64,000 nt of DNA from Phallusia mammillata (taxonomy: Eukaryota): the NCBI GenBank assembly GCA_965637545.1, contig OZ281495.1, positions 25,544,001 to 25,608,000 of the forward strand, in the 5' to 3' direction. The notes under the pieces were generated by a model. It was not told the DNA's origin. It searched no databases and saw only the letters and a program-made list of their open reading frames with translations. Shown piece by piece: positions 50,890 to 60,923 of the stretch. Numbering within the stretch: position 1 is the stretch's first letter; each line of letters starts with the position of its first letter. A program made the translations under genes and the position numbers.

Positions 50890-50973
50890 TATGATGTGAT
50901 TTTTGTTTTATTAGAGTCTTGTCCTTTTACTATGATGTGATTTTTGTTTTATTAGAGTCTTGTCCTTTTACTA
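50890..50973. repeat. Perfect 41-bp tandem duplication
   Basis: TATGATGTGATTTTTGTTTTATTAGAGTCTTGTCCTTTTAC twice, plus TA. Confidence 0.9.
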
Positions 50974-52127: not shown

Positions 52128-53060
52128 AATTAAATGATTGATTTATTAAAAGGCGTATAGCCTGTGCAGTTGATGAGACACACTACAAAGTAATAACAAC
52201 AGCTTTTCTGACTTATTTTTTAGGTCGTCATAAATAACTTATTACGTTTTCGTTTGTTGTTTGCTACTACTTTTAAAAGTAGTGACAAATGGCTTTTCAT
52301 TAGAAAAATCACTTAGCATGATTTTCAAAAAATTGTTTCGTCGGAAAAATTTGTCAGTAAACATGTAAAAAGCTTACATGCGCCTCATTGCTCAATACAC
52401 TTCCTGACTTTAAAGTCTGAAGAATCTGCAAGTACAAAATATAGTTGAGTTTGTCGAATGAGTGTGTAGTTTGGTTTTGGCTTCGCCGCTGGAGAAAAAA
52501 TCAAATCTAAAAATGGAACTAATACTTTCATGGATCTGTTTGAAATGTTTTTAGTCTACAGGATAACAACATAATTTATTTCAAATTATTATTACATTTC
52601 AATTTTGAAATAGGTATACCACAAATTATTTTGTCATAGTCGAGTATAGAAATCATGCTAAACAATCGCTTCGGAAAAATACGAACCTGTGTGAAAATAA
52701 AAAAATCCATGCATGGATATTGCACATTTTTTCCGTGCTGTGCTATCTAGTTAAAGTACTTCATAATAGTTTATAGTTTTGTCTTCTGAATACAAGAGGT
52801 AAGTTTTGTAAACAAAAATTTTAAACTGGATAATTACTAAAGCGTGCAGCTGTTGACATACCTCTGCATTCTGCACTTGCAGCACACTTGGTAAAATAAA
52901 ACTAAAACAGAAAAACATACATTTCTGAGTTCTGACGGTGACATGTCCCATTACTGGAATACTTGGTTTCATATATCAAGCGTTATCTTATATTTGATAT
53001 TAAAGTTGTTAAAATGTTGAACAATTCTTTTCAGGCTAATTATAGAATAGCGAAAACGTG

Positions 53061-54101
53061 ATGACATCAGAACTGTGGAAAACATTTGAAGATCATTTTC
53101 CAAAAGTTGTACAAGCTCTGTCATCTCCTGATGGCAAACATGCTGGGAATGGCATTACATGGAGTTATGAGAGAATTAAGGAGGTTTTGGAATACAATGT
53201 TCCTTTTGGTAAAAGAACCCGTGGTTTGACTGTTGTTTCTTCATTTAAATTGCTAATGGGCAACTGTTCACAAGAAGAACTAGAAATTGCTTTGAGTGTG
53301 GGCTGGGCTGTTGAAATATTGCAGGCATCATTTTTGGTGGCTGACGATGTGATGGACCAATCTCAAACACGAAGAGGACAACTGTGCTGGTTTCGCAAAC
53401 CTGGAATTGGACTACAGGCCATTAATGACAGTATGATTCTTGAGTCATGTGTATTTTCTATCCTGAGACTATTTTGTCGCAAAAAATCATTCTATGCTGA
53501 TTTAGTGGACTTATTTCATCAAGTTATACTGAACACTGAAATGGGGCAAAGTCTAGACATGCTAACATCAGAGCAACCAACTTTGGACTTGAAAGAATTT
53601 ACTCCTGATAGATATGCTGCCATGATCAAGTACAAAACTGCTTACTACTCATTTTATTTACCAGTGGCTGTGGCAATGTACATGGCAGGCATTTCAGATG
53701 CTGAATCTCATGAGCAGAGCTGTAGCATTTTGTGTAAAATTGGGTCCCTTTTCCAAATACAGGATGATTATTTAGACCTTTACGGTGATCCTGCTGTAAC
53801 TGGCAAAATTGGAACTGATATTGAAGAGTCTAAATGTTCCTGGTTGGTTATTGAAGCACTTAAAAGAGTAACAGATGAACAGTGCAAAGTATTAGAGACA
53901 TGTTATGGCCAAAAAGATCCGGAAAAAGTGCAAGGAGTGAAAGACTTGTATAGAAATCTTGAACTCGAGGCAGCTTTTAAACAGTTTGAAGAAGTGACCT
54001 ACAATGACATTTGTTCAGAAGTTGAAGGAATTGCCAACTCCAGCATACCAAAAGAAATTTATTTGAACCTTTTGAAGAAAATTTATAAGCGACAAAAATA
54101 A
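53061..54101 (+). CDS. FDPS: Farnesyl diphosphate synthase family, single coding exon (346 aa)
   Basis: GKRTRGL, FARM ASFLVADDVMD...RRGQLCW, AINDS, TEMGQSLD, YKTAYYSFYLP, SARM FQIQDDYLD, KIGTDIE, C-terminal KIYKRQK*. Confidence 0.95.
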   Translation: MTSELWKTFEDHFPKVVQALSSPDGKHAGNGITWSYERIKEVLEYNVPFGKRTRGLTVVSSFKLLMGNCSQEELEIALSVGWAVEILQASFLVADDVMDQSQTRRGQLCWFRKPGIGLQAINDSMILESCVFSILRLFCRKKSFYADLVDLFHQVILNTEMGQSLDMLTSEQPTLDLKEFTPDRYAAMIKYKTAYYSFYLPVAVAMYMAGISDAESHEQSCSILCKIGSLFQIQDDYLDLYGDPAVTGKIGTDIEESKCSWLVIEALKRVTDEQCKVLETCYGQKDPEKVQGVKDLYRNLELEAAFKQFEEVTYNDICSEVEGIANSSIPKEIYLNLLKKIYKRQK

Positions 54102-54603
54102 ATACTCCTCAAACTGATATCGAAAAATCAAACGAATTTTTGTAAGCATTATATTTTAGATTTGTCACATTTAGTCACGATAATTGTGAAAATGCAGTTT
54201 GTTTTGCACTGTCTCTATCCCAAAACAACTCAACTTATTGCAAATATTTTTGATTACATGTTCTGTTTGTGATTTTTCATTCTAATGATAACTAAATTAT
54301 GTTTCAAGGAAAATTTTCCAATTCGATTGTGTCTTTAAAGAGAATACATGTGTATCAGTTAAATATGCCTTACAAACCACTGCCACATAGAACATTTGGC
54401 CCTGTAAGCCATGGCTGCTCGACCTGGGTACCATATAACAATCAATTTATTTTCTTTTGCAAGCTTGTATTTAGCAAGGGCAAATGGTAATTCACTGTTT
54501 TGTTTTCACGTTGTTGGTGACATTTTGTATCAAAATACTAATTTCTGACAATCGATGTTGCCAATGTTATCCATTTTATGGAACAAAAGTCTGAAACTTT
54601 CAT

Positions 54604-56779
54604 TTAAAAACTAGTTTCTTCTTCCTCATTGAAATCTGCTTCAGTGCCCGCAAATTGCAATATTGAATAGGGCGGCGGTTTTGAAACGCCATTTCGCCCA
54701 TTGTATACTTGCGCCGAAGGTGAACGAGCCAAAGGGAGTCTACCAAGGTTCACCCAATCTTGGCTACAATCGCTGCCTCTCGCGTCGTGCTTTCGAGCAG
54801 AACTGGGCCCTGATATGCATTCTTTGTTATCATGGAGGCTATATCGGCTTTGACGTCTGGTGGCATGGTTTTTGTCATACATCGTAAGGCCGCTTAGTGT
54901 CGCGGCTCTTGGTAGCTTGTAAGTAGGTCCAGGATTTTGATCTACGAACCCACATGAAATTGGACGGTGTGTTGGCAGATGTGTCCACGATACTGCTGGA
55001 CTCCCGTGCATGTGACTGTTATGTGGCGACTCGTCGAATGAGGCCAGATTGCTATGCGAATATATGACCATTGGTTTAGATTGCTATACGAATACATGAC
55101 CATTGGTTTAGATTGCTATACGAATACATGACCATTAGTTTAGATTGCTATACGAATACATGACCATTGGTTTAGATTGCTATACGAATATATGACCAAT
55201 TGGTTTAGATTGCTATACGAATACATGACCATTGGTTTAGATTGCTATACGAATACATGACCATTAGTTTAGATTGCTATACGAATACATGACCATTGGT
55301 TTAGATTGCTATACGAATACATGACCATTGGTTTAGATTGCTATACGAATACATGACCATTAGTTTAGATTGCTATACGAATACATGACCAATTGCGTGC
55401 AGATTGCGTAATTACACAGGATCTTTCCAACGACCCAAGTTTTCGTGTGTTTACGGTAAAGACAAAAACGCCTAAATAAAGTCCCTACGCACAAATATAT
55501 ACCCATACAGTCATACACCACGTGCACTGACCTTTCAAATCTTGAGCTGTGAAAGTTACGAGAGTTTGCGTCGTAACGAATTTCATCGTGGGTTCGTTCT
55601 CTTTCATTTTGGTAGGCAAACTGAAAGAAACATAAAACCTCTTGCTTATAACTTACGTCGATTTTAAACTAATGTCCCGTAAATATCTCGATACATTTGA
55701 AAATACCTTGTCATTTTTCTGCTTTTGTTTGGAGCAGAGGGCAATCGAATGTAGCCCCGTGGAAAGAAAAGACACTAGACAGGCAGCAGCGTACACGATT
55801 AGCAGCAAAACCGTTACTGGGGGCATTGTAAATTCGATTGTGGCACAACTGGACACCCCATCGAAAACTGAACCTACATCGTTTAAATTGAAAATTTAAA
55901 TAATCGAAAGCGTGGACTTGTACTACAGCTTTTGACTGTATATTAAACCATTATTTTTACACGGAAAGCTATATTACCACAACTGAAAATGACAAAAGGC
56001 CTACAGCCCTACAATATAATATTTCGCTTGCCTGAACATTCTCCGTTCATCTGTACATCTCGTTCGTTGCATGCTACACAAGATTCCTCTTCAGGGATGT
56101 ACCGGTAGTGACGAAACGATGAGAAGAGGGGCAACGTTGTCATGACAACCGACAGCATATTGGCTAGGGACACAATACAGGCACTCATGCTCGTGAAGAT
56201 ACCTCCAAGCAGCTACAGTAATATAGAAGTTTGAGTACAAGCTAATTTCTACTTTTGTTTAATATTGGTGAAATCTCTAACCAAATATGAATTGGCCACC
56301 TTCACACCAACAATGCAGCTTAAGCCCGACAGCAACGCCATAATAGCACAAACGTAGACCGGCAGGGGAAACTGTAAATGCTGACTGACGCTTTTTGGGA
56401 TGAACGTCAATATTGCTTCAACTGTTCCCAGAACAATTCCACAAGCCTAAACATTAATTTTGGAAATAATATACAAATCATAGGAATTATTCTTTCAAAG
56501 TTAGATAAGCATGTTGTCTATTGACACAAAAACTTTAGGATTAAAGTAAACTTACTAGCTGAAGAGCTCCAAATGTGACAGAAAAACCAAGCAAACACGC
56601 ACGCACTTTTGACGGTCTTCTTTGCACAACTGAAGAGTTTGGAACACTTTTTGTGTCGTCATAATCGCTCTGATCAACAATCCTATAAAATCAAAATACT
56701 ATGTCCACAGATTTGTCAGACAATTCTGTGACACTTACTTAAAAACCTCTTACCTTCGCATGGAATCGTGTCTGTCCAT
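54604..56779 (-). CDS. CD20/MS4A-fold four-pass membrane protein (sarcospan/FAM189-ENTREP-like) with a C-terminal PPPY motif, about 395-400 aa
   Basis: Phase-consistent exons 56779-56754, 56682-56556, 56446-56300 (or 56282), 56212-56032, 55873-55707, 55620-55532 and 55051-54604. Four hydrophobic segments (GALQLACGIVLG...), a Cys-containing TM3-TM4 loop ending FDGVSSC, and tail KPPPYS. Confidence 0.78.
55046..55395. repeat. 32-bp minisatellite, about 11 copies, overlapping the 3' splice site of the tetraspan terminal exon
   Basis: Unit AGATTGCTATACGAATACATGACCATT(G/A)GTTT; one 33-bp unit; the A variant occurs in units 3, 7 and 10; no spacers. Confidence 0.97.
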
Positions 56780-57424
56780 TCTAAACTTCCAGGCTCATTG
56801 TTAAGGTGAATCTTGCAATGTATAGCATACGAGTGCTGTCGAATTACACTTAGCGCTGTACAGCCAATACATTATTTATACCTTTCTGTAAGCAACATCC
56901 AGCGCTGAATGCCCCGCCTTGCATTCAATTTCGACAACGGTGGCATTTTTTAATTAAGTTTAGTATGTCACATTTCTTGTTATCAGTATCAAATTCATGG
57001 AATTTTGTTTTATTCAAATCGTACCCGTGGAGTTGGCCTGTTTTCTAAATATATGTTTGGGAAAGGCGAATACTTCGGAGAAAATGCATGTATTTGGTCA
57101 ATAACACACATTTCAAATTCACAAAAGATAAGAATATTGCACAGAGACGTACGATACGATTTTCCAAGCGCCACAAATTTAAGCTTTGAACCAAAAAGGA
57201 ATGTGCAAAAAAGTCATAAAAGCTTGGTCTTTGCAATTTCACGCAAGTTTACCACAAAAGCTATAAACCTACACTACAAGAGGTTTATATGATCAGTAGT
57301 TATGTGAAGAGTAAACACACAGTGATACAAATGAAAAGGACTGAGATGGTAATACATACTCAGCCCTACTAAGTGCCGTGCAGACCTCACAGATGGTGAC
57401 AGTAAATTTTTACAGTGTACTTTC

Positions 57425-60923
<3,499 letters not shown>

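What the first reader, a model, noticed from the sequence alone, without database searches (positions are those of the whole stretch)
55046..55395. Minisatellite that is an array of about 11 copies of a 3' splice site, gating the PPPY tail
On the coding (minus) strand each 32-bp unit reads AAAC(C/T)AATGGTCATGTATTCGTATAG|CAATCT, i.e. the intron end plus the first 6 nt of the terminal exon. Only the last copy (AG at 55053-52) keeps the 149-codon frame ending in PPPY. One unit upstream gives a frameshift; two or more give TAA within 13 codons (e.g. SNLNQWSCIRIAI*). Because this is the terminal exon, such stops should escape exon-junction NMD and yield a stable tetraspan lacking the WW-binding tail. 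Units 3, 7 and 10 carry CTAAT, a better branch-point match 19 nt before their AG than the in-frame site has. A VNTR could thus tune the ratio of ligase-recruiting to tail-less isoforms between individuals, or the spliceosome must skip ten decoys.
Basis: partly seen in the sequence, partly recalled or inferred. Interest (0 to 1): 0.8.

Follow-up and report, generated by a model that had tools for sequence, protein, structure and literature searches.

The report
Minisatellite of eleven repeated splice acceptors
In the sea squirt Phallusia mammillata, a 32-base stretch spanning the end of the last intron and the start of the last exon of a membrane-protein gene has been copied eleven times in a row; this kind of repeat is already known from lancelets, the assembled messenger RNA uses the copy next to the real exon, and whether the ten spare copies are ever used remains open.

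Summary
A 32-bp x 11.2 array (55046-55407, 95% matches) lies at the 3' end of the last intron of a minus-strand gene. Each unit carries a branch-point-like CTAAA, the same weak pyrimidine stretch, TATAG and the first 6 exon bases.

FDPS identity shows the organism is the ascidian Phallusia mammillata.

Three other tunicates (Ciona, L001, L003) have the same gene in the same neighbourhood. Where the junction was read (Ciona, L001) the intron phase is also the same. All keep an invariant PPPY and none has an array, so the array is a recent amplification across an ancestral acceptor.

This is the "mirage" type of minisatellite described in amphioxus. It mirrors the human F7/IFI6/CBS repeats of 5' splice sites.

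No contig joins the donor to a decoy AG, so the "isoform-tuning VNTR" reading has no direct support. One thing stays unexplained. In three other runs, contigs run from the exon unspliced into the array, while the unique part of the intron is uncovered. Unstranded contigs cannot resolve this.

Verdict: a new member of a known kind, of moderate interest as a natural model of 3' splice-site choice.

The parts
55046..55407 (-). 32-bp minisatellite, 11.2 units. Each unit is 26 nt of intron 3' end plus the first 6 nt of the terminal exon, with a 6-unit (193-bp) higher-order period.
   Evidence: TRF; 11 pattern matches against 0 expected; sequence read
55052..55053 (-). Authentic acceptor AG (last unit). 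The first exon base is 55051.
   Evidence: Joint 55532->55051 (GT..AG on the minus strand) in the 1048-nt contig X17 record 9. The acceptor is at the same position in L001; Ciona has the same intron phase, with the exon starting a few codons earlier.
55084..55374 (-). Ten decoy acceptor AGs. The A of each AG is at 55085, 55117, 55149, 55181, 55214, 55246, 55278, 55310, 55342 and 55374. All lead to a frameshift or an early stop.
   Evidence: Script enumeration. No joint to any of them was seen.
55052..55531 (-). Last intron (480 nt, GTCAGT..TAG), of which 356 nt belong to the array. The other introns of the gene are 69-158 nt.
55532..55620 (-). Exon 6 (89 nt). It ends in phase 2 (..GAA AG|).
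   Evidence: Spliced contig X17 record 9; frame check
54604..55051 (-). Coding part of the terminal exon (149 residues including the split codon, plus the stop). The 3' UTR continues to about 54253-54370.
   Evidence: ORF; contigs X17 record 9, X1 record 3 and X5 record 15
54667..54678 (-). PPPY motif, invariant in four tunicates
   Evidence: Alignment A2
54607..54618 (-). C-terminal ETSF, resembling a class-I PDZ ligand ([ST]-x-hydrophobic). The corresponding ends in the other tunicates are TSF, TEF and SLL.
   Evidence: Alignment A2. The motif class is named from general knowledge.
55707..56779 (-). Upstream coding exons: 56779-56754, 56682-56556, 56446-56282, 56212-56032 (GC donor) and 55873-55707. 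They carry four hydrophobic segments.
   Evidence: Joints in X17 record 11 and X1 records 6 and 7; boundary check and hydropathy
55069..55071 (-). ATG inside the last unit, in frame with the whole tail (155-aa ORF). It matters only if an RNA starts within the array.
   Evidence: It is not on record as a called protein.

Best explanation
This is a 'mirage'-type minisatellite. In the lineage of Phallusia mammillata, a 32-bp segment spanning the ancestral 3' splice site of the last intron (26 intron bases plus 6 exon bases) was amplified in tandem. The likely cause is slippage or unequal exchange, as the 6-unit higher-order period suggests.

The amplification grew into the intron, so the copy adjoining the real exon is still the working acceptor. 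The ten upstream copies are removed with the intron as silent or mostly silent decoys. The protein keeps its conserved cytoplasmic tail (PPPY plus a PDZ-ligand-like end).

Shown: the array, the gene model, use of the exon-adjacent AG, absence of the array in three relatives, and conservation of the tail.

Inferred:
- The choice of the last copy depends on exon context. The units differ from the real site only in what follows CAATCT and at two bases, so enhancers or terminal-exon definition downstream of 55051 are the likely discriminator.
- The array has no selected regulatory role.
For: - Array.
- Canonical junction 55532|55051 lies inside one unbranched 1048-nt contig that also carries the exon 5|6 junction (X17).
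- Organism: the FDPS ORF is 100% identical to the P. mammillata UniRef entry.
- The orthologous terminal exon in L001 starts at the same base with a T-rich tract (cttag|CGATCT) and has no tandem repeat.
- Ciona (L002) and a fourth tunicate (L003) have the same FDPS/4-TM synteny (the WD40 neighbour was also seen in Ciona), no array, and an invariant PPPY; Ciona also has the same intron phase.
- Without the array the intron would be about 120-150 nt, like the gene's other introns of 69-158 nt.
- Literature: mirages in amphioxus Adh3, TnC, globin BflGb6 (3' boundary) and PGBD5 do not give aberrant mRNAs (PMC3087553, PMC3902484). In the F7 VNTR only the exon-adjacent copy is used (PMC1557585).
Against: - In X1, X5 and X6 (three other studies), contigs anchored in the exon pass 55051 unspliced and enter the array. 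No canonical junction contig is seen in those runs.
- In X1 the two read-through arms (depth 9.1 + 6.1) are comparable to the exon depth (23).
- The unique intron part (55408-55531) has zero depth in all four runs, which plain intron retention does not explain.
- Decoy sites are as good as the real one by pyrimidine content and branch-like motifs, and three have a better CTAAT. No cis feature that silences them was identified, and RNA structure does not mask them (z = +2.3).
Confidence: 0.6

Rival explanations
1. Decoy AGs are used at an appreciable, possibly sample-dependent rate. This gives mRNAs that carry array units in the last exon and encode a four-span protein ending shortly after exon 6, without PPPY or the C-terminal motif. 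Array length could shift the ratio.
For: - Every unit has its own branch-like CTAAA 25 nt before its AG, and the same pyrimidine count as the real site.
- The first full decoy lies about 160-190 nt from the donor, close to the gene's usual intron length of 69-158 nt.
- Exon-anchored contigs enter the array in X1, X5 and X6 while the unique intron part is uncovered.
- In the human 6-16 and CBS boundary minisatellites, the nearest pseudo-sites are used (PMC1557585).
Against: - No contig joins 55532 to a decoy in any of the four runs.
- X5 and X6 show no upstream exon at all, so their read-through RNA is not obviously an exon-6-containing mRNA.
- The X17 contig is unbranched through the junction.
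- Amphioxus mirages are reported as silent (PMC3087553, PMC3902484).
- The tail is conserved across tunicates, so frequent loss would be costly.
Confidence: 0.2
2. The RNA that links array units to the terminal exon is a separate transcript. It could start inside or next to the array (an internal start, or leader trans-splicing onto a decoy acceptor). It could also be on the opposite strand, for example read-through from the convergent FDPS gene. It does not come from alternative cis-splicing.
For: - X5 and X6 cover the terminal exon and the array edge but none of the upstream exons.
- In X1 the terminal exon (23) exceeds the upstream exons (6-9.5) by about the depth of the read-through arms (15).
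- In X5 the contigs tile continuously from FDPS (54000) to 55075 with falling depth (all).
- The last unit's ATG opens a 155-aa ORF in frame with the tail.
Against: - Contigs are unstranded, and no start, leader or loose end was seen at the array.
- X1 and X6 have gaps between FDPS and the terminal exon.
- In Ciona, leader trans-splicing prefers the first functional acceptor of a gene (PMC11155486).
- Upstream units would add short upstream ORFs.
Confidence: 0.12
3. The array, or its length, is an assembly artefact.
For: Copy number cannot be checked with k=31 contigs. The two DNA runs that hold about 97% of the words may be the source of the assembly.
Against: - Repeat-only contigs and exon-anchored contigs that enter at least 1.5 units occur in RNA runs of four studies, including unit variants.
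- Units carry structured variants (C/T, one 33-bp unit, a 6-unit period), which is typical of a real array.
Confidence: 0.03

Closest known systems
Amphioxus 'mirage' minisatellites (Adh3, troponin C, globins BflGb6/BflGb9, PGBD5), as described in PMC3087553 and PMC3902484
   Same: Both are tandem arrays whose unit spans an exon-intron boundary, so that splice signals are duplicated. BflGb6 duplicates the 3' end of an intron plus the start of the exon, exactly as here. The copy next to the real exon is the one in the mRNA. Adh3 units of 10-72 bp bracket our 32 bp.
   Different: The host is a tunicate, not a cephalochordate. There are 11 nearly identical copies, against 3-6 globin units of 81-100% identity. 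The exonic part is only 6 nt. Length instability, shown for Adh3 and BflGb6, was not tested here. Here some RNA contigs run unspliced into the array.
Human F7 intron 7 37-bp VNTR (PMC1557585)
   Same: The minisatellite's terminal unit spans the exon-intron junction, which yields several identical splice sites. Physiologically only the exon-adjacent one is used, although the others are functional when tested.
   Different: F7 repeats 5' splice sites at the start of an intron. This array repeats 3' splice sites, each with its own branch-like motif, at the end of an intron. The 5'-to-3' scanning proposed for F7 would not explain choosing the last of eleven acceptors.
Human IFI6 (6-16) and CBS boundary minisatellites, as summarised in PMC1557585 (Turri et al. 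1995; Yang et al. 2000)
   Same: These are boundary-spanning repeats in which pseudo-sites nearest the authentic site are really used, giving alternative products.
   Different: Those repeat donor sites, and their products differ by in-frame units. Here every decoy choice truncates the protein.

Membership tests
Mirage-type (exon-intron boundary) minisatellite | Head-to-tail array of minisatellite-size units | tested here: met
   Period 32, 11.2 copies, 95% matches
Mirage-type (exon-intron boundary) minisatellite | The unit spans an RNA-verified exon-intron boundary, so the splice signal is duplicated | tested here: met
   The array ends 6 nt inside the terminal exon. The boundary at 55051 is fixed by a spliced contig.
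Mirage-type (exon-intron boundary) minisatellite | The mature mRNA uses the authentic, exon-adjacent copy | tested here: met
   X17 record 9 joins 55532 to 55051. Exclusive use is not shown.
Mirage-type (exon-intron boundary) minisatellite | Length polymorphism or instability of the array | not testable with these tools
   Only k=31 contigs were available. SNP alleles were seen at 55033 and 55056, but not copy number.
Mirage-type (exon-intron boundary) minisatellite | Derived state: the orthologous boundary in relatives is single-copy | tested here: met
   No tandem repeat at the orthologous intron in L001, L002 (Ciona) or L003
F7/IFI6-type VNTR of 5' splice sites | The repeated element is a donor (5') splice site at the start of the intron | tested here: not met
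   The repeated element is the acceptor at the intron's 3' end
PPxY-bearing membrane adaptor for WW-domain (NEDD4-type) ligases | A conserved PPxY motif in a tail after the last membrane segment | tested here: met
   PPPY is invariant in four tunicates. The last hydrophobic segment lies at about residues 175-214 of 400.
PPxY-bearing membrane adaptor for WW-domain (NEDD4-type) ligases | Cytoplasmic exposure of the tail and binding to a WW-domain ligase | not testable with these tools
   No experiment was possible. No named family applies: Pfam finds nothing on the exon pieces and nothing is on record for the 442-aa Ciona orthologue.

The most novel reading that the evidence does not exclude
The array is not silent. 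Depending on sample or stage, RNAs are made that carry array units joined to the terminal exon. They would arise either by splicing of exon 6 to decoy acceptors (a four-span protein lacking PPPY and the C-terminal motif) or from a start or trans-splice within the array. Array length, which may vary between individuals, would then set the share of full-length protein.
Probability: 0.17. Interest if true: 0.7.

Novelty: new member of a known kind. Interest (0 to 1): 0.42.

Why it matters
Eleven near-identical acceptors in a row, each with its own branch-like motif, form a natural experiment on how a spliceosome picks a 3' splice site. It is the mirror image of the F7 minisatellite that was used to study 5' site choice. 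Here the machinery uses the last copy, not the first one it meets, at least in one sample.

The finding also extends 'mirage' repeats from lancelets to tunicates. Two further unchecked notes in this genome suggest the phenomenon may be common there. This bears on models of intron gain by boundary duplication.

If the decoys are simply silent, the locus is a curiosity with no effect on the protein.

Tried and rejected
- Family of the protein. Pfam on five exon-level pieces gave nothing credible. The word search with the 148-aa tail found only one fragment, P0001. The full HMMER search with the two-species tail profile found nothing else credible. My guess from memory that this is TMEM255/FAM70 was neither tested nor supported, since the Ciona orthologue has no Pfam hit on record, so it is dropped.
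- Joined model. The exons were joined only inside a local script to check frame, length and hydropathy.
- Exact-sequence look-up of the 155-aa ORF that starts in the last unit: not on record.
- Masking by RNA structure: the array folds worse than shuffles (z = +2.3), so this is rejected.
- The array as a dispersed repeat family: there are no other copies in the window.
- Bacterial-type promoter/terminator scan: empty, and not relevant to a eukaryote.
- Amphioxus as host: I suspected this after finding the mirage papers, but FDPS identity to P. mammillata rules it out.
- The 50-nt loose end of X17 at 56777 was searched in the window and not found.
- The caps on read laying and the look-up of sequencing runs (one call each) prevented a second look with more runs.

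Full report
**What is in the sequence**

Tandem Repeats Finder reports a single array at 55046-55407. It has period 32, 11.2 copies, 95% matches, and a second-order period of 193 bp, which is six units. A 27-nt core of the unit occurs 11 times in the window with up to 3 mismatches, all in this array, against 0 expected.

Read on the minus strand, each unit is AAAC(C/T)AATGGTCATGTATTCGTATAG|CAATCT. The last unit runs straight into ...CAATCTGGCCTC, the open frame of a terminal exon.

A script listed every AG between the donor and the exon. There are eleven TATAG|CAATCT sites, with one 33-bp step. Only the last (first exon base 55051) keeps the 149-residue frame. The site at 55083 gives a 47-residue frameshifted end. 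The others stop after 4, 13 or 24 residues.

The array begins at 55407, not 55395. PPPY is followed by 20 more residues rather than ending the protein.

**Gene model and RNA evidence**

One search found 21 runs of one organism. Contigs of four runs from four studies were laid on 54000-57000.

X17 record 9 (1048 nt) runs from 54253 to 55051, jumps to 55532-55620, then jumps to 55707-55866. On the minus strand both jumps are GT..AG. X17 record 11 and X1 records 6 and 7 give the remaining junctions.

After adjusting the ambiguous cuts, the coding exons are:
- 56779-56754
- 56682-56556
- 56446-56282
- 56212-56032, followed by a GC-AG intron
- 55873-55707
- 55620-55532
- 55051-54604

These sum to 401 codons with no internal stop and four hydrophobic segments. 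The exons were joined only inside that local script, and the joined protein was not sent to any search tool.

**Organism and relatives**

The neighbouring intronless FDPS ORF (53058-54101, plus strand) is 100% identical to a UniRef entry of Phallusia mammillata. The next best hits are other ascidians.

The word search with the tail found one fragment, P0001. Its contig L001 (Logan DRR090687) is a syntenic genomic piece of a related species whose FDPS is 79% identical. It holds the end of exon 5, an exon-6 equivalent, and the terminal exon at 45-51% amino-acid identity. Its acceptor sits at the same base (ttttttcttag|CGATCT against catag|CAATCT), is preceded by a T-rich tract, and has no tandem repeat.

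Ciona intestinalis (L002) has the same order FDPS / 442-aa gene / WD40 gene. Its last intron is in the same phase, and there is no array. A fourth tunicate (L003-L005) also has no array.

PPPY and a V.W..L...RPI.C motif are invariant in all four species. The C-termini are TSF, TSF, TEF and SLL.

The acceptor and the tail are therefore ancestral and constrained, and the array is a recent amplification in the P. mammillata lineage. Without it the intron would be about 120-150 nt, like the gene's other introns of 69-158 nt.

The protein has no named family. Pfam finds nothing on the exon pieces. Nothing is on record for the Ciona orthologue. The full HMMER search with the tail profile found no further relatives.

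**What it is**

Tandem repeats whose unit spans an exon-intron boundary are known from amphioxus under the name "mirages". They occur in Adh3, troponin C, the globin genes BflGb6 and BflGb9, and PGBD5. In BflGb6 the unit comprises the 3' end of an intron plus the start of the exon.

The authors report regular splicing despite the duplicated AG/GT signals. They also report length instability (PMC3087553; PMC3902484).

The human F7 intron-7 37-bp VNTR is the 5'-site mirror image. Its pseudo-sites are functional, but only the exon-adjacent site is used. In the 6-16 and CBS genes the nearest pseudo-sites are used (PMC1557585).

The present array meets the structural criteria of a mirage. It is a new member of that kind, in a tunicate.

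Earlier notes of this scan on the same genome mention a 58-bp duplicated acceptor in RPTOR that uses the downstream copy, and a minisatellite of 5' splice sites. I did not re-test either; they suggest the phenomenon may recur in this genome.

**How the last copy may be chosen**

There is one AG per unit, so the branch point serving the real AG must lie within the last unit. A CTAAA sits 25 nt upstream of every AG, the real one included. Three decoys also have a CTAAT at 20 nt. Pyrimidine content at -20..-3 is 10-11 of 18 for decoys and real site alike, similar to the gene's other acceptors.

The real site differs from the consensus unit at only two intron bases, 55063 and 55056. An allele seen in X1 and X5 has the consensus base at 55056. 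For X5 I infer the same at 55063 from where its contig ends, but that change was not listed by the tool.

The array RNA is less structured than shuffled controls (z = +2.3), so masking by structure is unlikely.

The only systematic difference is what follows CAATCT. My inference, which is not shown, is that exon context selects the exon-adjacent copy, through enhancers or terminal-exon definition.

**What remains unexplained**

In X1, X5 and X6, contigs anchored in the exon pass 55051 unspliced. They enter the array about as far as unique 31-mers allow (55093/55090, 55075, 55101). None of these runs shows the canonical junction, and none shows a decoy junction.

The unique intron part (55408-55531) has zero depth in all four runs. 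X5 and X6 have no upstream exon. In X1 the terminal exon (23) exceeds the upstream exons (6-9.5) by roughly the depth of the read-through arms (9.1 + 6.1).

Pure-repeat contigs can be explained by low-level pre-mRNA multiplied by copy number. The exon-anchored ones cannot be explained so easily.

Possible sources are decoy use, an internal start or trans-splice, antisense or FDPS read-through, and assembly holes in a very polymorphic species. In Ciona, leader trans-splicing prefers the first functional acceptor (PMC11155486), which makes trans-splicing here less likely.

**Verdict**

The gene model and acceptor are confirmed by RNA. The "VNTR tunes isoforms" reading is unsupported but not excluded, and I put it at about 0.2.

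The structure belongs to a described class, so its novelty is modest. Its value is as a clean natural model for 3' splice-site choice in an experimentally tractable chordate.

Noticed in passing
window 55874-56031 (minus strand): Intron 4 of the four-span gene is a GC-AG intron (donor GCAAGC). The junction is present in spliced contigs of two runs.
   Followed up: partly
window 56777-56826: The X17 contig leaves the window sequence at 56777 with 50 nt that occur nowhere in the 64-kb window, while the X1 contig reads colinearly to 56826. This is either an alternative 5' end or a polymorphism. The start codon could be 56779 or the in-frame ATG six codons later.
   Followed up: partly
window 53058-54101 (+) and 54253-55051 (-): An intronless FDPS gene lies convergent with the four-span gene. 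In X5 the contigs tile without a gap from FDPS into the terminal exon, so the 3' ends may overlap or FDPS may read through.
   Followed up: no
window 54604-60000; L002 10001-21047: The gene order FDPS / four-span PPPY protein / WD40-repeat gene is conserved between Phallusia and Ciona intestinalis. The four-span protein has no Pfam family in either species.
   Followed up: partly
window 55033, 55056: RNA contigs carry alleles. 55033 changes Asp to Glu. At 55056 the alternative allele has the array-consensus base, bringing the last unit closer to the consensus. This could reflect conversion between units.
   Followed up: no
window 50890-50973: A perfect 41-bp x 2 tandem duplication (TRF score 168). 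Its context was not examined.
   Followed up: no
window 57426-60000 (minus strand): A WD40-repeat gene lies upstream on the same strand. Its last coding exon appears to end at a TAG near 57426, only about 650 nt before the four-span gene's first coding exon.
   Followed up: no
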